From Macrostomum lignano (Eukaryota): DNA of 64,000 bases. Position numbers and translations under genes: made by a program. Within the stretch, counting starts at the first letter, position 1, and each line of letters starts with the position of its first letter. Location: the NCBI GenBank assembly GCA_002269645.1, contig NIVC01000083.1:1-64000 (forward strand), given 5' to 3'. Under the pieces are notes generated by a model. The model was not told where the DNA came from. It worked only from the letters and a program-made list of their open reading frames with translations, and searched no databases. This document shows, in pieces, positions 9,070-24,743 of the stretch.

Positions 9070-9405
9070 GTAGAAAATGGAGTGAGGTGGGTGTCTAGCG
9101 CTAGAAAATGGAGTGAGGTGGGTGTCTAGGGGCTAGAAAGTGGAGTGAGGTGGGTGTCTAGCGCTAGAAAATGGAGTGAGGTGGGTGTCTAGGGGCTAGA
9201 AAGTGGAGTGAGGTGGGTGTCTAGCGCTAGAAAATGGAGTGAGGTGGGTGTCTAGGGGCTAGAAAGTGGAGTGAGGTGGGTGTCTAGGGGCTAGAAAGTG
9301 GAGTGAGGTGGGTGTCTAGGGGCTAGAAGGTGGAGTGAGGTGGGTGTCTAGGGGCTAGAAAGTGGAGTGAGGTGGGTGTCTAGGGACAGGAAAATGGAGT
9401 GAGAT
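9070..9405. repeat. Minisatellite, 31/32-bp unit GGAGTGAGGTGGGTGTCTAGGGGCTAGAAAGT, just 3' of the PIGZ stop
   Basis: Tandem units; shares the GGAGTGAGGTGGGTG core with the arrays in PIGZ intron 2. Confidence 0.93.
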
Positions 9406-9451: not shown

Positions 9452-10304
9452 TTAGGCGGTTAACACAAGATGAAACACCATAATGGACAGAGCCTCGGAC
9501 AGCGATCGTCCGGCTTCGACAACTGGCGAAGAAGACTCGGACAGGCGCGCCAACACTCTCCTGGCCGGGGGTAGGCTCTCAGCGGACAGGTGGCCGTACA
9601 CCCTGGCTGCGTACTTTAAACCGTAGCGAGATTTAGCGAATGCGGCTCTAACGGGATCGGCGTGAACTGCGGAGAACACGGCATAGACTGAGGCGACTCG
9701 ATCCGATCGAAGCTGGGCAGCCCGGGACTCCAGCGCAGTCCGGTTGCCCATGAGATCTTCGAGTTGTACACAGGTAGACTGCGGCAGTAGCAGGGTGTGC
9801 TGCGGCGGCGGATAAGTGCCTAGGAACAGCAACCGATGGCAGAGAGGCTCCTGCTGCGGCTGCAGTCGACTATTGGTCGAGCGAATCAGCTCGCCAACAT
9901 GAGCGGTCATGGGGAGGACGCCGCCCTGGTGCAGAAATCCCAAGCCAATCACGGCGATAGCGTTGAAAGCGATCCAGGGCAAGGCGAAGCTAAATATTGG
10001 CAGGCGACAGCGGAGTCGTTGAGCGACGCATACGGTTGCTAATGGCAACAGCGGGACTAGGAAGCGAAGCTCCTGATGCGGAAACAGTGATAGAGCGGCT
10101 AAAGGTACTAGACAGGCGAGAACAATAGCTTTACTGAGCTGCTGCTGCTGTTGCTGCTGCTGCTGAGCCGACTGTCGTAGAGTAGCCCAGGCGTGACGGA
10201 CGAATACTGGGGCAGCTGGGCCTAGCAACAAAGCCAGATTGATCAGGTGAAGCCAGCGAGGGTGTGTACCGTGTTGAGCCAGGTTCTCCGATTGAGAGTT
10301 GTAG
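9452..10304 (-). CDS. PIGZ: GPI mannosyltransferase 4 (PIGZ/SMP3), exon 3
   Basis: Acceptor tttttcctcAG|C; YNSQSENLAQHGTHPRWLHL, HQELRFLVPL, GFLHQGGVLP match PIG-Z motifs (NLARHGTH, HQEARFL, HQGG); TAA at 9454-9452. Confidence 0.92.
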
Positions 10305-10344
10305 CTGAGGAAAAAGAAATGGTGAGGTAAGGGTGGAAATAAAG

Positions 10345-10638
10345 CGAAGTGAGGTGGGTGCATAAGGGGGTAGTAAAGCGGAGTGAGGTGGGTGCATAAG
10401 GGGGTAGGAAAGCGGACTGAGGTGGGTGCATAAGGGGGTAGGAAAGCAGAGTGAAGTGGGTGCATAAGGGGGTAGGAAAGCGGACTGAAGTGGGTGCATA
10501 AGGGGTAGGAAAGCGGACTGAGGTGGCTGCATAAGGGGGTAGGAAAGCGGAGTGAGGTGGGTGCATAAGGGGGTAGGAAAGCAGGATGGGGTGGCTGCAT
10601 AAGGGGTAGGAAAGCGGAGTGAGGTGGGTGCATAAGGG
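10345..10638. repeat. Minisatellite, ~34-bp unit GAGGTGGGTGCATAAGGGGGTAGGAAAGCGGACT, left half
   Basis: Same unit resumes at 11433 after an inserted element. Confidence 0.93.
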
Positions 10639-11432
10639 TGTAGTGCATGTGCCCTTGTCGGTTTGCAGGGCGCGATGCACTTTGGGGCTGGCAAGGGGGT
10701 TGGCGGGCGTGGCAGGGTCTGGCTGGCAGCCGGGCTTTGCGCGTGCCCCTCCCCAGCCGTGTCCCCTGCCCCGTGCTCAGGGCTGGTTGGCTGCGGCCGG
10801 GCCGGCTTTAGCGTGGGAGCGCCCCCCCCCCCTAGGCGGGGTTTTGATTGGCTGACCAGTGCGCGTTTGTTATTTTGCTCTAATTTTTGTGGGCTCAGCC
10901 GGTGAAGCCGTCTGCCCCCCCCCCTTAAACCTAAGCCTGTGGTGGTATTTATTAATTTGCGCTCCAGGTTTTTCTGACTCGCCTTTTTTCTTCGGCATTT
11001 TCTTGCTGAAATAAAATCAACAACGACCCAAAAAGGGTACACGTGCATCTGATAGCTCGGCCACAGGGCAAACGCGCATCTCATAACTCGGCTACCGGTA
11101 AGCCGCCTGTTTTAACTCAGTCTTTCCTGGGAAGCTTGAGAGATTACAGTAAATTCTCGCCAAAGCGTCATAACGCCAGGAGAGCGGACCCTGTATATCA
11201 TACTTTATTTTTACTTATACTGTATACCCACTGTATAAGCACTAGAGAGTGTCGCAACACCTCTGGGGGCAACGCTAGTTCTGAGCGTCGTCACACCAGA
11301 ACGAGCAACCTGGTACTCAGAGCGTCATAACGCCTGTCAGCAGTAATACCATCTTGGCAGAGCGTCACAACGCCTGCAGGTACCAACGTACTGTACTTGG
11401 GCTGGGCACCCGAACCGACCCGGGTTACGACA
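10639..11432. mobile_element. Probable solo LTR (~794 bp) inserted into the PIGZ intron-2 minisatellite
   Basis: TGTAG...CGACA ends, splits one array inside its G-run (flanks AGGG/GGGG), contains AATAAA near 11007 and four AGCGTC(A/G)(T/C)-type internal repeats. TSD imperfect. Confidence 0.55.
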
Positions 11433-11770
11433 GGGGGTTAGGAAAGCGGAGTGAGGTGGGTGCATAAGGGTAGGAAAGCGGAGTGAGGTAAAGCGGAGTG
11501 AGGTGGGTGCATAAGGGGGTAGGAAAGCGGACTGAGGTGGGTGCATAAGGGGGTAGGAAAGCAGAGTGAAGTGGGTGCATAAGGGGGTAGGAAAGCGGAC
11601 TGAGGTGGGTGCATAAAGGGTAGGAAAGCGGAGTGAGGTGGGTGCATAAAGGGTATGAAAGCGGAGTGAGGTGGGTGCATAAAGGGTAGGAAAGCGGAGT
11701 GAGGTGGCTGCATAAGGGGTAGGAAAGCGGAGTGAGGTGGCTGTATAAGGGGTAGGAAAGCGGAGTGTGA
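11433..11770. repeat. Minisatellite, ~34-bp unit, right half of the array split by the insertion
   Basis: Same unit as 10345-10638. Confidence 0.93.
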
Positions 11771-11828
11771 TAGGTTCCTAGGATATTGTGAACTGCATAA
11801 ATATCATTGGAAAACAGGCACAGTCTAC

Positions 11829-12591
11829 CTAACAAAGTTCCAGGGTGTTACAACAGCCGATCGCGCAAAATCTGACAGGAAATCGAAAGCGCCATTCACG
11901 GTTAGAAATTCGTCCATACCCAACGAGGCGAATCTGCTAGCAAATGTCGGATTAAAAGTCAGCGTATCGTACAACACTAACGAGACAAATGCGGCGCTAA
12001 ATGCGGCCAGAATTGTGGCGCCAAAATTGAAACAGGCGCCAATAGGATCGACTAGCGAGCGGGCGCAACGCCAGGCTGTGTAGAGATAGGGCACAGCGGC
12101 GAAGGCGACAAAAGTTGGCCGATTCATAACCCCGATAGCGGTGACAATTCCGGCTGTTGATAGGAGCACCTTTACTAGTGTATGACGACTATTGCCAGGC
12201 GCGGAATAGGCATTGAAGGCAAACAGTAGGCAGATAAAAACAATAGCTAGAAGACTCGACTCAATGGCATTGCTCAGAGTTCTAGTACCGTGCACCATGA
12301 CTATGTACGATGAAGAGTAGAGGAACAGGCAGCGAAACGTGTCCAGACCGAGCTCTCTAGCCAGTAAAGCTACCATAGCGTCATTTGCTAGCGACAAAAC
12401 TGCTATAGACAGCCGGGTGACTATCACAACAAAGTAGGCGTCAACGTACCAAGAGAAACCGTCCACTAGCAGATGTTTAAATAATAGTAGCGGGCCGTGA
12501 TAGAACAGATGGAGTATGGCGGCGCTACGGATTGGACGATCAACGGTGAACTCCCAGGGTGGCGGGCTGGTTCGGACACCGAGGAGGTCGC
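11829..12591 (-). CDS. PIGZ: PIGZ exon 2
   Basis: Acceptor aatcgcAG|GC, donor GTT AG|GTAGAC; GDLLGV..PWEF...RS, TRTLSNAIES, NRPTF, VTPWNF match PIG-Z. Confidence 0.93.
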
Positions 12592-12769
12592 CTGCGATTT
12601 TCAAAGATAAAAATACATACGGTTACACAGCTTGCTAGCTTGATAGCTGGTCGGTTGGTCATAAAATTGAAGTTAGGTTGAAGTGCTAGCGGGTCAGAGA
12701 AGTTAATCGATGGGTTGGTTGGTGCGCAAGCGGTCAGAGAAATAAATAAAGGGGTTGGTTCGTAATCGT

Positions 12770-13170
12770 GCGCTAGCGGCCAGAGAAATAAATGGAGGGG
12801 GGTAGTTAGTGTGCTAGCGGGCAGGGAAACAAATTGAGGGGGTGGTTAGTGTGCTAGCGGGCAGGGAAATAAATTGAGGGGGTGGTTAGTGTGCTAGCGG
12901 GCAGGGAAATAAATTGAGGGGGGTGGTTAGTGCGCTAGCGGGCAGGGAAATAAATTGAGGGGGGTGGTTAGTGTGCAAGCGGGCAGGGAAATAAATTGAG
13001 GGGGTGGTTAGTGTGCTAGCGGGCAGGGAAATAAATTGAGGGGGTGGTTAGTGTGCTAGCGGGCAGAGAAATAAATTGAGGGGGTGGTTAGTGTGCCAGC
13101 GGGCAGGGAAATAAATTGAGGGGTGGTTAGTGTGCAAGCGGGCAGGGAAATAAATTGAGGGGGCGGTTCG
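12770..13170. repeat. Minisatellite, ~40-bp unit GCTAGCGGGCAGGGAAATAAATTGAGGGGGGTGGTTAGTGT, in PIGZ intron 1
   Basis: Tandem units visible. Confidence 0.93.
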
Positions 13171-13209
13171 TGCGCTAGTGGGAGGGAAGAAAACAAATAT
13201 ATTTCTTAC

Positions 13210-13324
13210 CCGCAGAAATCTCAATTGACTGCATAAACTCATCCGGATGCAGATAGCCAGTTTGTGGCAAAAATATAAAAAAGAAACGAAACAGCAGCAA
13301 GGCTGTATACGGCTTTGAGTTCTC
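13210..13324 (-). CDS. PIGZ: PIGZ exon 1 (ENSKPYTALLLFRFFFIFLPQTGYLHPDEFMQSIEISA); no ATG ahead of the HPDEF motif
   Basis: Missed by the ORF track. PQTGYLHPDEF is the hallmark N-terminal PIG-Z motif. Donor GCG G|GTAAGA; acceptor tttaatttatttcAG|GAG in phase 0. The three exons total 1731 nt (576 aa plus stop). Confidence 0.9.
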
Positions 13325-13345
13325 CTGAAATAAATTAAAGTACAA
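13325..13345 (-). promoter_or_regulatory. U-rich acceptor (TTTAATTTATTTCAG) with no evident upstream cis donor exon; candidate trans-splice site
   Basis: Only ~415 nt separate it from the PTPMT1 stop, and no ATG-bearing exon with a usable donor was found in that gap by eye. Confidence 0.6.
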
Positions 13346-13739
13346 AATAATTACGTAGCAATTACAATGAATTACATTATCTGCTGCGAAACCTAAATTA
13401 AATGTAAGATATATATATATTTTAAAGGAATTGGTGAAGATTCTTCAGGGGAACGGGTGGAGATTCTTTAGAGGAATTGGTGGATATACTTCAGGGGAAT
13501 TTTTAGAGATCTTCAGGGGAATTGGTGGAGATTCTTCAAGGAAGTGAGGCGCGCCTACCCTACAAATTACTATTTTAGTAGTGTAAAGCATTTAAAACGG
13601 TAAAAAATTAAAGAAATTATTGAAAAACGACGAGACCAAAAATTTACAGACAACTTCATTATGGATTAATCTGTTAAATTAGGAAACTCAAATGCTAGCA
13701 AATATCTAGGGATTTTACAAGCGCAGTAAAAAATCGAAT

Positions 13740-14300
13740 TCATCTTTCTCTAGCCTGCTCTAATCTCCAGAATTCGTGCAGTGCATCCAGCTGAGGCCGA
13801 TTCAACAGTAAGCTGGGCCGTTTGGCGCGCAATCTATCGCACGCATCCACTGGCGCCAGGGACCGATGGCGCCGCATTAGATAAGCCGCGGCCACTGTGC
13901 CGCTTCGAGTCCTACCAGCTCTGCAGTGCAAGTACACGCTGCCGCCCTTAGCAACCGTTGATTCGATAAAATCGCAGCATTTCTGCAACTGTCTAGCGCT
14001 TGGCGAATGACCGCCAAAATCTGGTACAGATAGTTGCATCCGAGCTAGGCCCAGCCTGCGGCACTCTTTCTCCCCGGCAACCCAAGCCGGCTTAACCTCG
14101 TGCGGTTCGTTTATACTCAGTACAGCTTTGATGCTCTCAGATTTTGCTACAGACTGGAATTCTCTAACCAATGGCAGCGCGCCCAGCACGAGGTGCTCAT
14201 CGATACGGTTGTACCAGTCAGACAGGCCAAGCAGTCGCCACGTCAGCGACTTGGTGACAGCTGGGTAGAATAATAAGCGATGGATGGATGGCCAATCCAT
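13740..14300 (-). CDS. PTPMT1: Mitochondrial phosphatidylglycerophosphatase / PTP-family phosphatase, intronless, 186 aa
   Basis: RLLFYP, DWYNRID..LVLGALP, VYLHCRAGRTRS (CX5R) and QLDALHEF align with PTPMT1. Confidence 0.93.
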   Translation of the reverse strand: MDWPSIHRLLFYPAVTKSLTWRLLGLSDWYNRIDEHLVLGALPLVREFQSVAKSESIKAVLSINEPHEVKPAWVAGEKECRRLGLARMQLSVPDFGGHSPSARQLQKCCDFIESTVAKGGSVYLHCRAGRTRSGTVAAAYLMRRHRSLAPVDACDRLRAKRPSLLLNRPQLDALHEFWRLEQARER

Positions 14301-14341
14301 GAATCAATCAGTCAGGTGACTGTGTCTTTGTTAACAATTTT

Positions 14342-14942
14342 CGAGGGGTGTCCAAAAGTAGTGGGAATTTTCAACCTAACTCATAGTTGGATTCATATAG
14401 ATAGGAATGGCGCTGACGTTAATTGAAAGCGACTTTATGTATCTATAACATACTTTTTGAATACCAATCTAGTACCGTGATCAATCCACCGATGCTCCAC
14501 CAAGACAATTCACAACCACACACGGCTTCAAGGACAGTGGAGGCAATTCAAAGCATGAAGTTTGAACTTCTGCCTTACCCACCATACTTGTCTGACTTGG
14601 CTGGGAGAAGAACGTCAACTGCAACGGTGACAACGAACGTAAAGGTCTCCATCCCTAACGACAAGGATATTTGAGTGTGACTGACTATCGTGTTAAGAAC
14701 TTCAATAGATATGCTCTTACAGATCGATAGTCATGTTTTGTTGTTTTGTTGTTTTGGAATTTTGGAATTTGGGCACGGTACTAGATTGGACATAACTTCT
14801 GAATGCCGGTAGGTATTTACAAAATTCAAAAAGTATGTTATAGATAGATAAAGCCGCTTTCATTTAACCTCAGCGCTGTTAATCTATCTGAATCCAACAA
14901 TGAGTTATGTTGAAAATTCCCACTACTTTTGGACACCCCTTG
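14342..14942 (+). mobile_element. Internally deleted mariner element with long mirrored arms
   Basis: TIRs CGAGGGGTGTCCAAAAGTAGTGGGAATTTTCAAC / GTTGAAAATTCCCACTACTTTTGGACACCCCTTG, TA on the right (TT on the left), arms stay similar for ~140 bp, and the central remnant LHQDNSQPHTA...LLPYPPYLSDLA matches mariner HDNARPH / HPPYSPDLAP. Confidence 0.88.
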
Positions 14943-15194
14943 TAGGTATCAATCAGTCATGGTGACTGTGTCTTTGTTAACCAAAAGTAACTATCAGAGA
15001 CATGCTAGCCTGTCTATAACTAAGGTGTACAGCGGTCCCTGTCTATTAATCCTCAGGTATATACACCCTCTGCACAAGGGAATCTGACCTTACTCCTATC
15101 TTAGTTATAAAGATAGCTAAGATATATAGATATATAAAGATGACCTTATTCAAATGAATAAAGAAAATAAACAAGTTCATCGAAAAAATAATAT

Positions 15195-15325: not shown

Positions 15326-15607
15326 TCACTGCGAATCCCACCACTCCTTAAGCCAGCGGTCGTGATAAGGTCCCGCCCGCAGTACAGTCAACAGCAGTAC
15401 AGAGCCAGTCAGAGCAGCCTCTGGTCGTTTTAACACCTGGGCCAAGGTTAGGCGTTTATCAAGCGTCTCAGGTTTAGCCTTTGATGTTGCCGCTGAATCG
15501 GAGGTGCTGCTGCAGTCTAGGTAGAAGAGAGCACTGTCTGGATTGTAGGCTTTAGCTGAGTTCCAGGCTGCCGGTGGCTGACTAGGATCAAACACGGTTG
15601 CCGCCAC
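15326..15607 (-). CDS. TTC4: TTC4/Cns1 last exon (C-terminal wheel domain)
   Basis: Phase-0 acceptor ttctcaAG|GTG matches the phase-0 donor at 29055. VF..PAAW....YNPD...YLD and LTLAQVL resemble TTC4 MF..PSWD..KYCPD..VYFE and STLLQVL. Confidence 0.78.
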   Translation of the reverse strand: MAATVFDPSQPPAAWNSAKAYNPDSALFYLDCSSTSDSAATSKAKPETLDKRLTLAQVLKRPEAALTGSVLLLTVLRAGPYHDRWLKEWWDSQ

Positions 15608-16029
15608 CTTGAGAAGATTTAATTATGCGCTAATTGGAAACATTGAATTTAAAATGATAACCATCTCAACCCACATCTACGAGCGTACCAACCATCAACA
15701 TCTCTGTCCCCAAAAAAATATTCTTATCAAACTGCAGTAGAACAGCAGTATTTTACTTAGGTATTTTTTACTGTCTCGGAACCTAAGTAAAACAGCAGTG
15801 ACATACTGCATGTGCACATCGGCAAAACTTAATTACTGCGCATTTACTGGGAAAGCTCTTTAAGACAAGCTGAAGGCGTAGTGCCTCTTAATTCGAAGAC
15901 CAAAGCAAAAAGACAATTATGTGTAGCATAAGAACTAATTTTACTTCCACTAAGCGGTTGAATTAAATAAATGAAAATTGTTTTTATAAACAAATTTGAT
16001 TTTAAAAGCTTTGTTTTTGCAGTTTAACA

Positions 16030-16560
16030 TGTGTGGCAGGCGGGATGCCACTGTAAATTGAAACTCTAATTAACTGTTAATTTTGCAATTAGTCGTCCCC
16101 GCGCTGTCCGCTGAAGTTTCCCCTGTGTGGCTTGTTTTGGGTTTCCCAGACATCGCTCCACCGCATGTTCCACGCGTTGATAAATATTATCCTTTTGTGG
16201 AAGTTTGTTAAACTGCACTATTGTCCCGGGTTTTTTTTGTTACTGCCCATGCTGTGACCAGTGTGCCCACCGTGGCTTCCAGCAGCTGCTCCCACCCGCG
16301 GAACTGCTTGCTGTCTCTATTTAAACCCCCCCTTGTTTCATGTGCAATTTCATTCCCAGTTCCCCCGTTCCTCTACTTCCTTTACCTTTTCCTTTGCTGA
16401 TTCGTGCACCCAATTATTTACTTGCTTCGACTGTTAACCAAGTTTAATAAGTTCATTAATCAGAGAGTTTTCTATTATAATTTAGCACCCCGGTGCCGTC
16501 GCAATTCATCTCAGTCGTTTAATCAGCTATCCCAAACTGCTTGCGAATTAATAACTGACA
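16030..16560 (+). mobile_element. Possible solo LTR
   Basis: TG...ACA ends and a TATA-like CTATTTAAA near 16317; no convincing TSD. Confidence 0.3.
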
Positions 16561-19029
16561 TTAAATAATATCTAATAAATAAACTACATCCTACTTATTC
16601 GTTGATCCATAAGCAATAGCCTATCTTGAGTTCTTTGCCCACGGGGCGTAAAACAAACGAAGTTCTAAGCTCAAAGAAAGCTTCGAGACTTATTCGTTCC
16701 GTAATACGTAAATTACGGTGGTGGCAGCTCTACACTACTGAGAGTAATAAGCTCAGCAACTCGACGCATTAGTTTTCGGTATCAGAATCTCCGGCGTCTA
16801 CTATTTGAACGACCGTGCCGCTAACGACCGCTCCGCTACGATTACGACTACCCTCCCCCGGAACTTGAGGACAGTCGGAGTAAAACAGGAGAAAGAAATT
16901 CGTTGTGATTCGTCTGCGCGATTTTCTGGATTTATTCGTGCGAACGCAACGCCGGCGGGAATTCAATCGTGGAATCCACCCCACCTCACTGGTGACAGTA
17001 ACCGACCAATTTCCAAACAAAACTTTCTCCGCCCCCACCTCACATGAAAGTTTAATATTTAAGAACCGATATCATGGGCATGGCAGATTTGGCAGACATG
17101 AAAGACAGTCGATTAAAACTAATTTGTGATTTTATTATCTTCTGCAATCAATGTCCATCTTCTGCTGGATATTTTTGGCTATGCAGGACGTTGATACGAA
17201 ACAAATAAAACTGCAAGAATCGCAAAGAACAATAGGCCTAACATAGGCCTAGTGAATGAATTTAATTTAAAATACTTTACTGTTTTGTAACATGTTATAA
17301 CATCTGCAGCCTGTCGTAGCATATCACCACATGACCATTGCAATGGAATTAGCTTCTTGGTTTATCATATTGATATCTAACTGCTAGCTGGGTAGTTAGG
17401 CTAGGTTCGCTGGGTTGAAAGATATAGACAAATTGATGAATCAGTGGATCAAATTAGAAAGAAATTTGAGTAGGCATAGCCAAATTATGGCCAGGGACAA
17501 AAAGCTTTTATTGTAGAAATTATAGTATACCTTAGGCCTATAAATTAATAATATAAGTCTATATTATCTATAGAGTACTATGCATTTTAGAAGCTTAGTA
17601 TTGCAATTTATATTAATAACTATATATTGTTTTTTATGTATTATAAATAATTAATATTACTGTTTTAAGATAGGAAAAAAGTAGATAATTTGCTCCTGAA
17701 GTATGTAGTCTATGATTTGAAATATAGTAGAGCAATTCTCAAAATAATGATAAATTGTCACTTATCCTTTTTACTTTATTACTAGTCATTTTTTGTTTTT
17801 TTTAACCTTCCTTTGCACTAAGAGGTTTCACAATTAACCTAAATATTTTGGACCAACAAAAATAACATCTTTGTGTTTTGCAAAGAGCTGTTATATATAA
17901 TAAACTTTTGATTTAAAAGTGTTTTAGACTTATGTTAGCCCTAAATTTCATCATAATTAGTCAAAATATACTTTAGTTTTCTACACTATATACATTATAT
18001 ACTTTCTAAACCATATACTATTAGTATAAATATATATAGCTTTAATTATTCTACATTAGTCTAAGGCAAAACAGCTTTTAGCTATAATTTTATGAATATA
18101 TTCATTTTATATTAGGCAACAAAGGTGTTTGTTCAGTTCGTTAGTAATATAAGATATAATGGCAAAAACATTTATTACATTAAAAATTAGATAAAATAGT
18201 TTCTAGAAGATAAAAGTGCTAGTCTATCAAATAATGTTAGATTCTAAGTTGGCTTACCAAGCCTAAATGGGTAAAAAATCGATTCATTTATTGGCAGTTA
18301 AAAATCATGATTAGTCACTTTGAAATGAAATTGCAACTAGCTCTGCTATATATAGCGATATAGCTATTTAGCTATATAAAGTAGCAAAAACACAAATCAT
18401 AACAATTGCTAATACTTCTACAAGCCATATTGTACTCTCATTCTAGTTTAGAAATATGGAGTTGGCTTCCTGTAGTTGTGTATATATAAAGCCATTGTCT
18501 AAGAAAGATAGTATGTGTTGATACCTAATCATAACTAGTTTGACTAAAGTGTTACAGGGTTTTCTTCTGCAGGTTATTACTATTTCAATATAACTGATTA
18601 TTTAAATTACTTCCTAAGTATTACTAGTTTCCTCTCACTTCCTAGTAGCATTTGACAAAAAATGTCCCATAAAAGGGCCATTTTATCTATGGGTAACTTA
18701 CTAAATTCCCTCTAATTCTATCGTCTGCTTATTCTCTTTTGTGTACTTACCAAGTAGCATGTAGTAAATGTTAATTGGCAGTGTTAGGGTAGCTGTTTGG
18801 TAGTGGTTTCTGTGGCTTAAGTGGCTTACTTATCAAGGCTCTAGTTTATTATCCTGTCTTTCAGGACTAGAGGGTCATAGCAAATTCTTATCTATATTTC
18901 TATTCTAGAAAATCAAGCCCAATTTTGCTACTTGTAACAGTGGTAGATGCTCTACTAATTGAGCTAGCTAATCATAATTTTCAACATTGTATGGGAATCT
19001 AGCAATCATTCTCTAACCTTTCAGCAAAA

Positions 19030-21138
19030 ATGAAACGGCAGCTTTGGGACAAGACCTATTATGAAAGACAAGAAATAAAAACACGTGGACTGCAAGGTAG
19101 CCCAGAAGAAAATGAACCGTCCCAAAATACCAGTAGATACCAGGGAGTTGAATCTACTAGTGGCTCTAGCGCCTATAATGAGTATGAGATAAAACATAGT
19201 TCACCAATGGAAGAAGCCAATGAACTTTTGTGCACCAGATGGGGCAAATGAAAGCGACAATTCTGACATTGGAACTAAAGCATATCCTGATTGCATTAGC
19301 AAGTCATCTTCTTTGGATAGTGTTGAGACTGATTGTACTAGGGACGATTTTGAATTAGCAATAGTTAGCTGGTTTAGAAGGAACCCGTCTGTATCAAAGA
19401 CAGCATGCAATGACCTGCTGTCTGAGTTAAGAAAGTTCCATGTGAATCTTCCACTGAGTATCGAGACACTCTTGTCACGACATGCACCATTTCAAGGTGA
19501 AATTGTGTCAGACATTAGGGCAGAATATTCGCAACACTATTTTACTATTCTTCAGTCTCTTGAGCGGGAGCTAAGAAGTAATGAACTTTCTGATCACATG
19601 AAGTCAGGACTGATACTGAAGTTTCACTTTGATGGGGTAGAGCTGCATTCAAGTGGAGACAAGTACACGTGGACAATATTAATGCAGTTGTATCCTATCA
19701 AAGAAGAACCAATTTTGGTGCAATTTTATTCCGGTTCATGCAAGCCTGATCCTAGTAGCTTCTTGCGATCTTTTGTAGATGAACTAAAACCCATTTGTGA
19801 ATCAAAGTCTCTTGTTCTTCATGACATCCATTTGTCCAATGTCAAGGTTATCTTTATCTGCGACACACCTGCACGCGCACTTTTCAAGTGCACAAAAGGT
19901 CACACAGACTATTCTGTGTGTTGAGCGGTGCGAGGTTGAAGGTTTCTATGAACATGACCGTCGGACAGTCATTTTCGATGAATTGACGGCACATGCTCGC
20001 ACAGACAAGAATTTTCGAGATAAGACTGACCAAGAAAATCACAATGGGGTATCCATTCTAGAGGAACTTAAAGTCGACATGGTGAAGATTTTATTTTGGA
20101 TCCCATGCATCTAATACTTTTAGGTGTAATGCGTAGGACACTCAACTTCTGGATTAGCCAAGGTTCTGTGGCATGCCGCCTCCCTTCATTAGTTATTCGC
20201 ACTATAAATAGAAAGCTGCAGCGTAGCATGGAATCAGTGAAGAACTGCTTTAGTCAAAAGGCACGTAGTTTGCAATACGTAAACAAATTCAAGGAACGGA
20301 ATTCGCTTTGTTACTTAAGTTCACTGGAGTAGTGGTTTTTGAAGGAAGCTTGTCTGATGCCACTTTTTGCAACTTCCTGCTTCTGCATGTTGCATTCTTC
20401 GTTCTTTCAGACAGCGTCCTTTGTGTGACACACTTGGACTTGGCAAAGAAGTGCATAGACGAATTTCTGAGGCATTCGCGCATTATTTATGGTGCTAGTT
20501 TCTTTTCTATTAACGTTCACAGCCTGGCACATGTGCCTGATGATGTCAAGAACCACAAGCTCTCACTTCATCCAATGAGTGCTTTTCCATTCGAAAACTT
20601 TTTTTTGCTCCTAAAGGCAATTAAGTCTCCCTACCTTTCAGCACAGCAGGTTAGAAACTTGGTTAGAACGAGCAGGTTGTCAAGAAGCAGTGATAAAACA
20701 TCAATAAGAATTAAAAACAAGTGCGCTTCGCCCTGAATTTTTTGCCCGACGAAATGCGATCGGCTTCCCTATTCAAGTCAATTACATTTGACAACGTAAG
20801 AGTGTGCTGCAAAGACCAGCATGGACAGTTTTTTTGCGATATCGTTTAAAGAAATCTATCGACTTAAAGTAGTAATTAGAACTGAATCGGAAAGCATTTT
20901 GTCTGCAAAGAAATTGCAACTGGATTTAGCAAAGGATGCCTATGAGTACTCTGTAGTTTCATCAGAACTAGGAATCTTTTCTTTATTTTTTCGTAAGCTA
21001 AGACATCAAGGGGACAATTCGAAATTTAGAGAGGAAGATTGTATTCACTTTGTGCCTGTAAAAGCTGTACGATTTTTTTATATGTGCCTACCCACCGTCG
21101 ACAATGAACAAGTATTTTTCCCAATTCAACTTGACTAG
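19030..21138 (+). pseudogene. Frameshifted EnSpm/CACTA (CMC)-type transposase
   Basis: Consecutive ORF pieces carry animal EnSpm motifs: FHFDG..L.SS...WTIL, YSG..KP, FVDEL, FICDTPARA..K..KGH..Y..CERC, DPMHL..LGV, NVHSLAH, SAFPFENF. Several frameshifts. Confidence 0.85.
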
Positions 21139-21143
21139 GGAAA

Positions 21144-22509
21144 ATGTACGCCATTTCGCATTTGCACAATTGCAGCCAACTGCTTGAAGCGCGATGGAAA
21201 ATACACACTTTCTGCTTTTTTTCGCACAGACCAAAGCTTTTTTATCGCACCAATAGTTATCCTTGATTTGCCGGATCGCTGCAAAAACTGGACTCCTGAT
21301 GAGTGGAACAACAACTGTGACGAAGAAGTATCTGTGATCTGCACTACTTCTGATTGGAGGGCTGAGGGTGTGGTCCTGCAGATCGCACACTCGCATGATA
21401 GCCTCGCTGCATCTTTAAAGCAGGCGAGGTCTCTGCGCTATGAAAAAGAGGCAAAGGTAGCCGATATGCTGAAGTTCTTTCGCCAGAGGTTCAGGAGTTC
21501 TAACGCTAGATGCACTTTCCCAGCCCATATACAAACTGAATCCGATGTTTCTGATGCAACGGCGGAGCTCCGCGCTGCAGGCGCGACTACAATCAGGAAG
21601 AAACAACTGGGAAAGTAATCGGTGTCCATGCCCCGCCCTATCCAATGGCAGGTCAATTCGACCTACGTGCCAGTGTTTTAGATCCAGAATCTGAGCCTGT
21701 AGTTTATAACATAGTAAACCTCTCTGAAGAAGGGACTCTGTCATGTGCGTATGCGACTTCAGCAAATTGTGCTACTACGGCTAGCGTCGCACAGCTCGCG
21801 GGCACAATCAGCAGCCCAACTGAACATCATCAAGGACTACCTGCAGGTGCTGCAACTGGTAGCTGCTCGTGCTCTTGCCAAGCGGAGATTCGAGAGCTCC
21901 GTGACTTTGTGATCCAAGTGATTGCTCAAAACAAAGTGCAGACGCGGATTTTGCAAGCCATACAGAGTGCTGCCAGATTCCAAACAGCGACTGATTTAGA
22001 CGAGCTGCCAGATGATGTGAAGCTGCCAGCAACATTCCTACCAGAGATGGAGCGTGCAGAGGAGTGGGCTTCCACTCCTGATAACAGAAAGTTGCTGAAG
22101 AGCCTGTTGGAGAGACATGTAGGGCTCAGCGCTGGGGAGACTGCCCAAAATTGCTTGCGTCAAGTATTCACGAAGGATACGGCCAAAGTTGTTACTTTTG
22201 TGTCATCTGCCAACTCCAACCAGGAAGGTGGTCAGCCGCGAAAGTTGGCAGTGAAGACTGACCTTCCAAATTTGCTCAGATGCATAAAGGGTAAGTCACA
22301 TCTGTTTTATTTTTCACACATCTTTTATGCAGTAAAGCATGTACAACTGTGAAAAAAACTGAGTGGAAAAAAACAACCCAAAAATTGTGACCAAAAATGC
22401 ATTTGTCTTTCTAGGAGCAGTTCGCAAGAATCATCCAACGCAGACAGATCAAGGCCTGCACAGGGACATTGTTACGTGGTTGAACAATCAGAAGCCGCGA
22501 AAGAAGTGA
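21144..22509 (+). pseudogene. Second (accessory) gene of the EnSpm-like element, frameshifted, with one intron at 22291-22414
   Basis: Starts 6 nt after the transposase stop. Donor AAG G|GTAAGT, acceptor ttgtctttctAG|GA, last exon GAVRKNHP...DIVTWLNN. Coiled-coil plus BEN/DUF4806-like helical C-terminus typical of such elements (recalled, not searched). Confidence 0.65.
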
Positions 22510-24743
22510 TGTGAAGCAGCGTATTCTCATAATACATTACATTAATAATCTAGACATATTGTCTACGCATTTCTGCACTTGCCCTCGCTATTGTAACAGC
22601 CCTATCAACTCCGTCTAATTTTCTGCTAGATATTTCGAAATTGTATCTAGGTGGAGGAGTGTGAGCTGTGATCTGGTAGCGTACTTTAGGGTGGGGATAG
22701 AGGTGACTTCCTCGCAATGCGGGTCGTACCTTGGCAGCGCTAATGTAGGTAGGCAAGACACTAGCTACGACTAATGGTGACGGGGGGGGGGGTATTTCTA
22801 CTGGCACGAGGGCTAAGGTTACCGATTTTAGTCACGCAGCCGTGGGGCGTATCAGGATGGATTGAAGTTGCCTGGTGAAAGCCCTGCTCTCTCTCTCTCT
22901 CTCTCTCTGTAGGAACGGGGATTAGCACGATTTCATAGGGAATTAGGAGACTTCAGGTGGATTCCTAAGCTTAAGGTGAGTTTCATGGGGCTTCAGGTGA
23001 GTTTCAGAGTAACTTCGGGTGGACTTCAGGTAGGGTTTACAGGGCGTTTGGGAGTTAAGGGAGGATTGTAGAAGCGAGTAAATTCGGGTGGCTAAGGCTG
23101 ATGGATGATTTCGCCGGGGAGTGGTGCAGGAATGTAAAGGGATTTGGCAGATCTTTCTAAACTGAGAAATAACAGAGCAACTCAGGTATTAATAGGTAGA
23201 TTGGACAAAACGTTCATTAAATCTGGTTAGGTAAAATGAGCCAAGAAAGGCTAGGCAAGGACATATTGCTGTCGGGGAAGGGAATGGTTGCTTTTCTCTC
23301 CACAAAGCTCTTTCTCTATAATAAAACATGGGGTGGGAGTCTGGCATGGTTGAATGATTCTGAGCGCGCGCAAGCGCAACGAACACCTAAAGTTGCGTGA
23401 ATGGATAACGATTGTAGAAAAAGCGTGTGGGAAGATTGTTCGCGCTAATTTGAATTCTAGTTTCATACTTTTTTTCAGAAGGAAACACTGCCTCACTATT
23501 TTATCGCATTTTCTTATTGGTGTTTTTACGAACAACAGTTTTAAACTTCACTTTAACTTCACTGTTCCACAAACAGGCAGGCAGGATATTGCTGCGGCTT
23601 TCGTTTCCAGTATTAGACAGGCTTGAAATTGAAATTCATGAAATGATCAATAATGTTTACAAAGGAAGCGTAGGTGAATAGACAATAAAAATTAACAAAG
23701 CTTAAAGTGCTGTTGAATTTAACATGAGGGTTTTTCGACCATATCTGACGCGGTCCGGAAAAAAACAAGGTAGACAAAGTAAAAATTGCATAGTACGTTT
23801 GTTTCTCAATAAAGTCAAATTTTTTCTCCTTGTTCATCAACCACCGCATCTTCCACTACTTGTGGATGGCGTTGAATACCCGGACGACTGCCTACTTGAC
23901 CTTGGAGTCGTTCTTGTAGGCAGTTTCTTCAAGTTCTTCATGTTGAGGAACAGCTAGAAGTCGTAGGGGGCAAGTCAGGACTGTAGGGTAGGTGGGGTAC
24001 CACCTCCACACTGAAGCTCCTTGGTTGGTCGCCTTTAAGGTATTGACCTGGGTATTCTCATGGCTAAGGCGAAAATTTTAGCTTCTTCTGTCAGCTATTT
24101 TGCTTACCTTTTTACACATTTTTCTCATTTCTAAGTACCATTTTCCAACGTTTTCCAATGCTGTTTAACATGTTCTGTTGTTCTGTGTTTGAGTTTGTCT
24201 CTGAGTTTGCCAAGCTAAATAAAGTTTAAAGTGTTAAAAGTTAAAGGAAAAACATTTTCATCTGCTATTTATCTATTATGTACTTACTTACATCACATGC
24301 CAATCTGCTCTTCGACTTAATTTACGCTAATTATTTGTGGTCTCACGCGTATGCGCAATTTGCAGTTTAGAATTCTGCAAGTTTACAGATCGTTTTGCGA
24401 AAAGCTACTGTACAATTTACAGTACTGTTCTGCTGGTATGTAAGCCATACAGAGTTCTGCCAGATTCCAAGCAGCGGCTGATTAAGACGAGCTGCCAGAG
24501 GTGGGTAAGGAAATCCAGTGAGCGCTTAATGCCCAGTAAACAGGCAGTTAAATACTGCAGTAAAATACTAAAATCAATGATAGCCGTAGAAGTGCAGTTT
24601 TACTGAAGTCGTCTTTGACTCGGATCACTGTCATGTTACACTGCAGAGACTATTCGACCAGAATAATTGATGTTGATTACCCCACGCTAACCCATGCACA
24701 AAAACCATGGATTAGCCGATGAAAACGGTACCTTAGCCAAGAA

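What the first reader, a model, noticed from the sequence alone, without database searches (positions are those of the whole stretch)
13210..13345. PIGZ has no genomic start codon; the initiator may be donated by the spliced leader
Seen: the first exon begins exactly at TTTCAG|GAG AAC TCA in phase 0 and reads into a hydrophobic segment and PQTGYLHPDEF with no ATG before the motif. Adding one Met gives 577 aa, the normal PIG-Z size, and PTPMT1 ends only 415 nt upstream. Established: flatworm spliced leaders end in AUG, which can act as the initiator codon. Inference: this GPI-pathway gene can only be translated after trans-splicing.
Basis: partly seen in the sequence, partly recalled or inferred. 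Interest (0 to 1): 0.8.

Follow-up and report, generated by a model that had tools for sequence, protein, structure and literature searches.

The report
Flatworm PIG-Z gene lacking its start codon
In the flatworm Macrostomum lignano the GPI mannosyltransferase gene PIG-Z has no start codon in the genome and almost certainly gets its AUG from the trans-spliced leader, a mechanism known in flatworms since 2006, so this is a clean but ordinary example.

Summary
On the minus strand, the first PIG-Z coding exon (13324..13210) begins directly after a TTTCAG acceptor in phase 0. The reading frame is open upstream to a TGA at 13447-13445 and contains no ATG. Three exons give 576 codons.

The window is the first 64 kb of Macrostomum lignano scaffold NIVC01000083.1. 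The published M. lignano spliced leader ends in ATG. Joining it at 13324 gives ATG|GAG AAC in frame. The resulting N-terminus (His of the HPDE motif at residue 27) matches 11 homologues, where that His is at residue 24-32.

Intron 1 has the same position and phase as in Limulus and Pecten, so this exon is the ancestral first coding exon minus its ATG. All three genome copies keep the acceptor and lack an ATG. Two GenBank models start exactly at the acceptor. PIG-Z and the upstream PTPMT1-like gene carry consecutive gene numbers of one transcriptional unit and lie 415 nt apart, which fits an operon.

No SL-joined cDNA could be retrieved, so trans-splicing is inferred rather than shown. A cis-spliced mini-exon is not excluded.

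The mechanism is already known (Cheng et al. 2006) and is recognised in Macrostomum annotation. This is a new member of a known kind, of low interest.

The parts
13325..13330 (-). 3' splice acceptor TTTCAG, proposed as the SL trans-splice site; the AG is at 13326-13325
   Evidence: Read directly. It fits the M. lignano trans-splice motif [T/C]TNCAG (PMC8629364). It is identical in all three genome copies.
13210..13324 (-). PIG-Z coding exon 1 (115 nt, phase 0, no ATG). It encodes codons 2-39, covering TM1 and the HPDE motif.
   Evidence: The intron after it has the same position and phase (phase 1, in a Gly codon) as in Limulus and Pecten PIG-Z.
12592..13209 (-). Intron 1 (GTAAGA...CGCAG), mostly a 40-bp tandem array (12683-13188)
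11829..12591 (-). PIG-Z exon 2
   Evidence: matches GenBank PAA91592.1 at 100%
10305..11828 (-). Intron 2 (GTAGAC...CCTCAG), with 33-34-bp tandem arrays. It has no counterpart in Limulus or Pecten.
9452..10304 (-). PIG-Z exon 3, including the TAA stop (9454-9452)
13325..13739 (-). 415-nt intergenic spacer / proposed outron. It has no in-frame ATG, no GTRAG donor and no AATAAA or ATTAAA, and it contains a 23-bp tandem array (13427-13538).
13740..14300 (-). Intronless upstream PTPMT1-like dual-specificity phosphatase gene (186 codons plus TGA). It belongs to the same annotated transcriptional unit as PIG-Z.
   Evidence: Pfam DSPc, E = 1.3e-15. GenBank names Mlig016694.g2/.g3 and Mlig024868.g1/.g2 pair it with PIG-Z.

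Best explanation
PIG-Z of Macrostomum lignano is the downstream gene of a short polycistronic unit (PTPMT1-like gene, then PIG-Z). Its pre-mRNA is resolved by spliced-leader trans-splicing at the TTTCAG acceptor at 13325-13330. The 35-nt SL ends in AUG, and joining it to exon 1 creates AUG|GAG AAC UCA. The SL therefore supplies the initiator methionine of a 577-aa GPI mannosyltransferase 4.

The ancestral first coding exon has been kept, but its own ATG has been replaced by the acceptor, so a full-length enzyme depends on trans-splicing.

Shown: the gene structure, the absence of a genomic ATG, frame compatibility with the SL ATG, the fit of the N-terminus to homologues, and the published SL sequence.

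Inferred: that the SL is actually joined here, and that ribosomes start at its AUG.
For: 1. Exon 1 starts in phase 0 directly after TTTCAG. The frame upstream is open for 40 codons with no ATG and ends at a TGA.
2. The window is M. lignano NIVC01000083.1:1-64000. The M. lignano SL ends in ...TTGCATG, and its trans-splice acceptor motif is [T/C]TNCAG (PMC8629364).
3. With the SL Met, His of the HPDE motif is residue 27. In 11 homologues from molluscs, chelicerates, vertebrates and yeast it is residue 24-32, and the Met aligns in the same column as the Xenopus and Spea Met.
4. The next in-frame Met is residue 32, which lies after invariant Y25, D29 and E30.
5. Intron 1 has the same position and phase as in Limulus and Pecten, so exon 1 is the orthologous first coding exon.
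6. All three genome copies conserve the acceptor and lack an ATG. Against copy NIVC01000827 the CDS differs by 6 synonymous and 2 non-synonymous changes, which suggests constraint, though on few sites.
7. GenBank CDSs PAA76372.1 and PAA91680.1 are 5'-partial and begin at the first base after CAG. In that annotation, mature mRNA boundaries were cut at peaks of SL-trimmed reads (TBONE; PMC5730564).
8. PTPMT1 and PIG-Z are numbered g2/g3 and g1/g2 of the same transcriptional units. The spacer is 415 nt, or about 303 nt without the tandem array, below the 1-kb operon threshold of PMC8629364.
9. The spacer contains no GTRAG donor.
10. The independent UniProt model A0A1I8H0M9 starts 12 nt upstream of the acceptor, exactly where the genome begins to resemble the SL 3' end (AATTTATT). 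That is what aligning an SL-bearing cDNA to the genome would produce.
11. SL-AUG initiation is established in flatworms (Cheng et al. 2006, as cited in PMC9851317; PMC3510090; PMC12582326). It is acknowledged for Macrostomum (PMC10468722).
Against: No read or cDNA with the SL joined at 13324 could be retrieved. The exact MENSKPY... protein is not in the 15-billion-protein collection, and the gene ids appear in no held paper or supplement.

The GenBank model of this very copy (PAA91592.1) starts 18 nt downstream of the acceptor, at 13306.

The 5' ends in this annotation are noisy. The neighbouring Wheel-domain gene starts in mid-exon. The PTPMT1 models start one codon after the genomic ATG, with no AG acceptor there.

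The sequence just upstream of the PIG-Z acceptor resembles the SL 3' end (p about 0.03 among YTNCAG sites). A tolerant SL-trimming step could therefore in principle have produced a false SL site.

Phase-compatible ATG mini-exons exist in the spacer, for example ATGAAGTTGTCT|GTAAAT at 13659-13648.
Confidence: 0.78

Rival explanations
1. A small cis-spliced 5' exon carrying its own ATG is joined to the same acceptor. It could lie in the 415-nt spacer (for example MKLS, 13659-13648, donor GTAAAT, or GTAAAG in the other two copies) or further upstream. The SL would then not be needed for initiation.
For: Four phase-0 ATG...GT combinations exist in the spacer. The MKLS candidate is present in all three copies.
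Against: None of these candidates has the M. lignano donor consensus GTRAG. The three copies are about 98% identical throughout, so conservation carries no information. None of the four public gene models includes such an exon. A 5'-partial ORF that starts at the first base of exon 1 means the transcript model itself begins there. Adding 4-34 residues would make the N-terminus as long as or longer than the longest homologue compared.
Confidence: 0.08
2. The gene is not translated into a full-length enzyme. Either translation starts at the internal Met32 or at a near-cognate codon on unspliced RNA, or these copies are decaying duplicates in a recently polyploid genome.
For: M. lignano carries many duplicated copies (PMC8629364). 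Copy NIVC01000082 has a 1-nt deletion in exon 3 and a truncated 380-aa model.
Against: The 576-codon ORF is intact in two copies, with 6 synonymous against 2 non-synonymous differences. The conserved GT22 motifs and the ancient intron are retained. A Met32 start would delete invariant catalytic-loop residues. The single-base deletion sits in a long-read assembly and may be an assembly error.
Confidence: 0.06
3. The apparent transcript start at the acceptor is an annotation artefact. Reads from unspliced RNA were trimmed because the genomic sequence AATTTATTTCAG resembles the SL 3' end AATTTATTGCATG.
For: The upstream 18 nt match the SL at the 3% tail of YTNCAG sites. The PTPMT1 models also start right after an SL-like stretch that has no AG acceptor.
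Against: This would explain only the annotation, not how a conserved enzyme is made without an ATG. The acceptor is canonical and lies exactly at codon 2. The mismatch and indel fall within the last 5 nt of the SL, where trimmers are least tolerant.
Confidence: 0.05

Closest known systems
[quoted passage not shown]
   Same: The SL ends in AUG. The acceptor is placed so that this AUG is in frame. No genomic ATG gives the conserved N-terminus, and the orthologue alignment requires the SL Met.
   Different: The host is a free-living macrostomorph rather than a parasitic neodermatan. PIG-Z was not found named as a member of this class in the papers consulted. Use of the SL AUG here is inferred rather than shown by cDNA or reporter assay.
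M. lignano operons resolved by SL trans-splicing (Wudarski et al. 2017, PMC5730564; Ustyantsev & Berezikov 2021, PMC8629364)
   Same: Two same-strand genes lie less than 1 kb apart. The downstream gene has a YTNCAG acceptor at its 5' end. Both genes are numbered as parts of one transcriptional unit.
   Different: Those studies did not address where translation starts. Here the downstream gene depends on the SL not only for a cap and a 5' end but also for its start codon.
PIG-Z / SMP3, GPI alpha-1,2-mannosyltransferase 4 (glycosyltransferase family 22, Pfam PF03901)
   Same: It has the domain, the length, the N-terminal TM1 and the Y-x-H-P-D-E-F motif. The position of intron 1 is shared with arthropod and mollusc genes.
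   Different: The genomic start codon is absent. A second, lineage-specific intron and a poly-Q run are present. Identity to non-flatworm homologues is only 28-34%.
slORFs (ORFs created by SL addition; slORFfinder, PMC9851317)
   Same: The start codon is supplied by the SL.
   Different: slORFs are mostly new or alternative ORFs. Here the SL AUG starts the canonical, conserved ORF.

Membership tests
SL-AUG-initiated flatworm mRNA (Cheng et al. 2006 class) | The host's spliced leader ends in AUG | tested here: met
   The host was identified as M. lignano. The published SL is CGGTCTCTTACTGCGAAGACTCAATTTATTGCATG (PMC8629364).
SL-AUG-initiated flatworm mRNA (Cheng et al. 2006 class) | The mRNA is SL trans-spliced at the acceptor in question | tested here: inconclusive
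   The evidence is indirect only. The acceptor is a canonical YTNCAG. Two GenBank models begin exactly at it. The genes carry g2/g3 numbering within one transcriptional unit. No SL-junction read or cDNA was retrievable.
SL-AUG-initiated flatworm mRNA (Cheng et al. 2006 class) | The SL AUG is in frame with the main ORF, with no intervening stop | tested here: met
   ATG|GAG AAC... runs through 576 codons to TAA.
SL-AUG-initiated flatworm mRNA (Cheng et al. 2006 class) | No genomic AUG gives the conserved N-terminus; orthologue alignment requires the SL Met | tested here: met
   There is no ATG in the 40 upstream in-frame codons. The first internal Met is residue 32, after invariant Y25/D29/E30. 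The SL Met aligns with the homologues' Met.
SL-AUG-initiated flatworm mRNA (Cheng et al. 2006 class) | Ribosomes actually initiate at the SL AUG | not testable with these tools
   This needs ribosome profiling, N-terminal proteomics or a reporter assay.
PIG-Z / GT22 mannosyltransferase | Pfam PF03901 domain above the gathering score; best named relatives are GPI mannosyltransferase 4 | tested here: met
   175 bits against a cut-off of 23.8. The named hits after the self-match are mostly annotated PIG-Z / GPI-MT4.
PIG-Z / GT22 mannosyltransferase | Conserved first-loop motif Y-x-H-P-D-E-F after TM1 | tested here: met
   YLHPDEF at residues 25-31. Y, D and E are invariant in the 12-sequence alignment.
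PIG-Z / GT22 mannosyltransferase | Fourth-mannose transferase activity on GPI | not testable with these tools
   This needs a biochemical assay or complementation of yeast smp3.
M. lignano operon (criteria of PMC8629364) | Adjacent same-strand genes, downstream gene trans-spliced, repeat-adjusted spacer under 1 kb | tested here: met
   The genes are on the same strand with a 415-nt spacer, or about 303 nt after removing the 112-nt tandem array. The transcriptional-unit numbering is shared. The trans-splicing criterion itself rests on the indirect evidence listed above.

The most novel reading that the evidence does not exclude
Both genes of this operon are preceded by sequence resembling the SL 3' end. 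PTPMT1 has GACTGATTGATT-CATG ending in its start codon. PIG-Z has ACTTTAATTTATTTCA-G ending in its acceptor. The SL is GACTCAATTTATTGCATG.

The most novel reading is that SL sequence was written back into the genome from trans-spliced cDNAs, by retroposition or short-tract gene conversion. This would have given the intronless PTPMT1 gene a genomic ATG of SL origin. In PIG-Z the remnant would have decayed from GCATG to TCAG, creating an acceptor exactly where the SL AUG is re-supplied. That would be a route by which genes become, or stop being, dependent on the SL for their start codon.
Probability: 0.05. Interest if true: 0.6.

Novelty: new member of a known kind. Interest (0 to 1): 0.22.

Why it matters
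There are three practical points.

1. This gene, and probably many others in M. lignano, are flagged 'partial' in GenBank and UniProt only because the start codon is not in the genome. Annotation pipelines for SL trans-splicing organisms need to add the SL AUG. The Macrostomum community has already met this problem (PMC10468722).
2. Transgenes or knock-ins built from this locus need the acceptor and trans-splicing, or an added ATG, to be expressed.
3. The conserved intron 1 shows that an ancestral ATG-bearing first exon was converted into an ATG-less, SL-dependent one. This makes expression of a GPI-anchor enzyme obligatorily dependent on trans-splicing.

None of this changes current understanding of flatworm gene expression.

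Tried and rejected
- **Direct transcript evidence.** An exact look-up of MENSKPY... (577 aa) and of the 576-aa form found neither in the protein collection. The PIG-Z cluster has only four members, all genome-derived. The gene ids are absent from the held papers and supplements.
- **SL RNA gene in the window.** There is no match to the SL 3' end plus donor with up to 3 mismatches. One chance-level 11-mer hit was seen. There are no Rfam hits.
- **PIG-Z as a retrogene with an SL remnant.** Rejected, because intron 1 is ancient and shared in position and phase with Limulus and Pecten.
- **Parent copy of PTPMT1.** A search for M. lignano paralogues returned only the three-copy cluster itself, so the retrogene idea for PTPMT1 could not be tested.
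- **Cross-species conservation within Macrostomum.** No hit between 34% and 100% identity exists in the database, so it could not be assessed whether the ATG loss is shared with M. cliftonense or M. hystrix.
- **Conservation between the three copies as a test of the rival mini-exon.** Uninformative, because the copies are about 98% identical everywhere.

Full report
**What is in the sequence**

The feature lies on the minus strand. Reading the reverse complement, a TTTCAG acceptor (13330-13325) is followed at 13324 by GAG AAC TCA AAG CCG TAT... This encodes ENSKPYTALLLFRFFFIFLPQTGYLHPDEFMQSIEISAG up to a GCGG|GTAAGA donor at 13210/13209.

The same frame stays open upstream for 40 codons, back to a TGA at 13447-13445, and contains no ATG. 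Exons at 12591..11829 and 10304..9452 join with canonical GT..AG introns to give a 1731-nt ORF of 576 codons ending in TAA.

The product matches Pfam Glyco_transf_22 (E = 3.6e-51). Its best named relatives are GPI mannosyltransferase 4 / PIG-Z proteins of about 550-600 aa.

The upstream same-strand gene is an intronless PTPMT1-like dual-specificity phosphatase (14300..13740, DSPc E = 1.3e-15). Its TGA lies exactly 415 nt before the acceptor.

**Whose genome**

The top protein hit is 100% identical to a Macrostomum lignano GenBank entry (PAA91592.1). The contig carrying it, NIVC01000083.1 of assembly GCA_002269645.1, is identical to the window base for base. The window is its first 64 kb. M. 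lignano is a free-living flatworm.

Its spliced leader is published as CGGTCTCTTACTGCGAAGACTCAATTTATTGCATG, which ends in ATG. The motif enriched at its trans-splice acceptors is [T/C]TNCAG, and TTTCAG fits it (PMC8629364).

**Does the SL AUG make sense as the start?**

Joining the SL at 13324 gives ...GCATG|GAGAAC, that is ATG GAG AAC in frame.

I aligned the N-terminus with 11 homologues from molluscs, chelicerates, amphibians, a marsupial, a mite and yeast. With the added Met, His of the HPDE motif falls at residue 27. In the homologues it is at residue 24-32, and the added Met sits in the same column as the Xenopus and Spea Met.

The only other in-frame Met is residue 32, where homologues have a conserved Phe. 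Starting there would remove TM1 and the invariant Tyr25, Asp29 and Glu30.

**Is exon 1 really the first coding exon?**

Yes. In Limulus polyphemus and Pecten maximus the first coding exon starts with ATG and ends ...GCA G|GTAAG, inside the Gly codon of the (M/V)AG|(N/D) motif. M. lignano exon 1 ends ...GCG G|GTAAG at the same residue and in the same phase.

This is therefore the orthologous, ancient first coding exon, with its ATG replaced by a splice acceptor. It also rules out the idea that this PIG-Z is a retrocopy.

**Evidence from the other genome copies and public gene models**

The assembly holds three near-identical copies of the PTPMT1-PIG-Z pair.

- All three keep TTTCAG|GAGAA and lack an ATG.
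- Against copy NIVC01000827 the CDS shows 6 synonymous and 2 non-synonymous differences, including a synonymous AAC to AAT in codon 3 of the 577-aa protein.
- Two GenBank CDSs (PAA76372.1 and PAA91680.1) are flagged partial and begin at the first base after CAG.

In this annotation, mature mRNA boundaries were set by cutting 'transcriptional units' at peaks of SL-trimmed reads, and ORFs were then called with TransDecoder (PMC5730564). The frame is open upstream, so a 5'-partial ORF starting at that base means the transcript model starts there.

PTPMT1 and PIG-Z are named Mlig016694.g2/.g3 and Mlig024868.g1/.g2. They are thus consecutive genes cut out of one transcriptional unit.

The spacer is 415 nt, or about 303 nt after subtracting a 23-bp tandem array. 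That is below the 1-kb operon threshold of PMC8629364. It contains no GTRAG donor.

An independent UniProt model from the older assembly (A0A1I8H0M9) starts 12 nt upstream of the acceptor, at AATTTATT. This is exactly where the genome begins to resemble the SL 3' end, as expected if an SL-bearing cDNA had been aligned to the genome.

**Caveats**

- I could not retrieve any read or cDNA showing the SL junction.
- The GenBank model of the window's own copy starts 18 nt inside exon 1, at 13306.
- The neighbouring Wheel-domain gene model starts in mid-exon, so 5' ends in this annotation are not uniformly reliable.
- The PTPMT1 models in all three copies start one codon after the genomic ATG, at a position with no AG acceptor. 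One copy has CTG instead of ATG there.
- The 18 nt before both annotated starts resemble the SL 3' end. The right-anchored alignment score is 9 in each case. The empirical p is 0.0016 against random positions, 0.013 among ATG sites (PTPMT1) and 0.03 among YTNCAG sites (PIG-Z).
- A tolerant SL-trimming step could therefore have created false SL sites. For PIG-Z the canonical acceptor, the missing ATG and the N-terminal fit argue independently for a real splice.
- Four phase-compatible ATG...GT mini-exons exist in the spacer, for example MKLS at 13659-13648. None has the GTRAG consensus and none appears in any public model.

**Mechanism and rivals**

Best explanation (0.78): PIG-Z is the downstream gene of an operon, is SL trans-spliced at 13324, and is translated from the SL AUG.

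Rivals:
- a cis-spliced ATG mini-exon (0.08);
- a non-functional or otherwise-initiated copy (0.06);
- an annotation artefact caused by the SL-like upstream sequence (0.05). This last one would leave the start-codon problem unsolved.

**Comparison with what is known**

SL-donated initiator codons in flatworms were demonstrated by Cheng et al. (2006).

- In Schistosoma mansoni the SL AUG is in frame in 28% of trans-spliced transcripts, and more than 40 cDNAs need it (as summarised in PMC9851317).
- In Echinococcus granulosus, 143 of 187 SL-bearing clusters are full length if the SL ATG is used, and the property is conserved among orthologues (PMC3510090).
- A terminal ATG is a shared feature of the flatworm SLs reported so far (PMC12582326).
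[quoted passage not shown] It kept the ATG on reads to avoid annotation problems (PMC10468722).

The present case therefore passes every sequence-testable criterion of this class. Two criteria remain open: the SL junction and actual initiation at its AUG.

**Verdict**

The phenomenon is textbook for the phylum. It is a new, well-documented member of a known kind. Its main value is for annotation (entries wrongly flagged 'partial') and as an example of how an ancestral start codon can be handed over to the spliced leader. Interest is low, at 0.22.

Noticed in passing
window 14297-14335 (minus strand); L002 9000-9030; L003: The GenBank CDSs of the PTPMT1-like gene in all three copies are 'partial' and begin at DWPS, one codon after the genomic ATG (14300-14298). 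There is no AG acceptor there, and copy NIVC01000827 has CTG instead of ATG. The 18 nt upstream (GACTGATTGATTCATG) resemble the SL 3' end (p about 0.013 among ATG sites). This could be an SL remnant of a retroposed, intronless gene, a non-canonical splice, or an SL-trimming artefact.
   Followed up: partly
window 13325-13345 (minus strand): The sequence just upstream of the PIG-Z acceptor (ACTTTAATTTATTTCAG) also resembles the SL 3' end (GACTCAATTTATTGCATG), with 15 of 19 aligned columns matching and p about 0.03 among 333 YTNCAG sites. The UniProt model A0A1I8H0M9 starts exactly at the AATTTATT match.
   Followed up: partly
window 14315-14981: A foldback / MITE-like element lies 44 nt upstream of the PTPMT1 ATG. 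Nested inverted-repeat arms of 59, 53 and 21 nt (90-95% complementary) span 14344-14940, flanked by a 21-nt perfect direct repeat (14315-14335 and 14961-14981). The other two genome copies lack 53 bp of one arm (window about 14408-14460).
   Followed up: partly
window 12683-13188, 11443-11767, 10341-10643, 9071-9403: Both PIG-Z introns and the region just after its stop codon are largely filled with 32-40-bp tandem arrays. The arrays in intron 2 and downstream share a related unit (AAAGCGGAGTGAGGTGGGTGCATAAGGGG...), and all are G-rich on the plus strand. Long stop-free repeat 'ORFs' in these arrays are not coding.
   Followed up: no
L003 about 13280 (equivalent to window exon 3, nt 262, about 10043): Copy NIVC01000082 has a single-base deletion (TTGCC[A]TTAGC) in PIG-Z exon 3, which explains its truncated 380-aa GenBank model. 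It is either an assembly error or a decaying duplicate.
   Followed up: partly
window 13306: The GenBank CDS of the window's own PIG-Z copy (PAA91592.1, 570 aa) starts at ACA, 18 nt inside exon 1 and not at a splice site. This differs from the two other copies.
   Followed up: partly
window 15326-23306 (minus strand); L003 4848-8056: The next upstream gene encodes a protein with a Pfam 'Wheel' domain (PF18972). Its GenBank CDS in L003 begins in mid-exon with neither an ATG nor an acceptor, so it is 5'-incomplete. In one copy it appears to belong to the same transcriptional unit as PTPMT1 and PIG-Z, since those two genes are numbered Mlig016694.g2 and .g3.
   Followed up: no
window 10128-10160 (minus strand, exon 3): There is a run of nine glutamines (CAG/CAA repeat) in a loop of PIG-Z that is absent from the homologues examined. 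The older assembly's model breaks off here.
   Followed up: no
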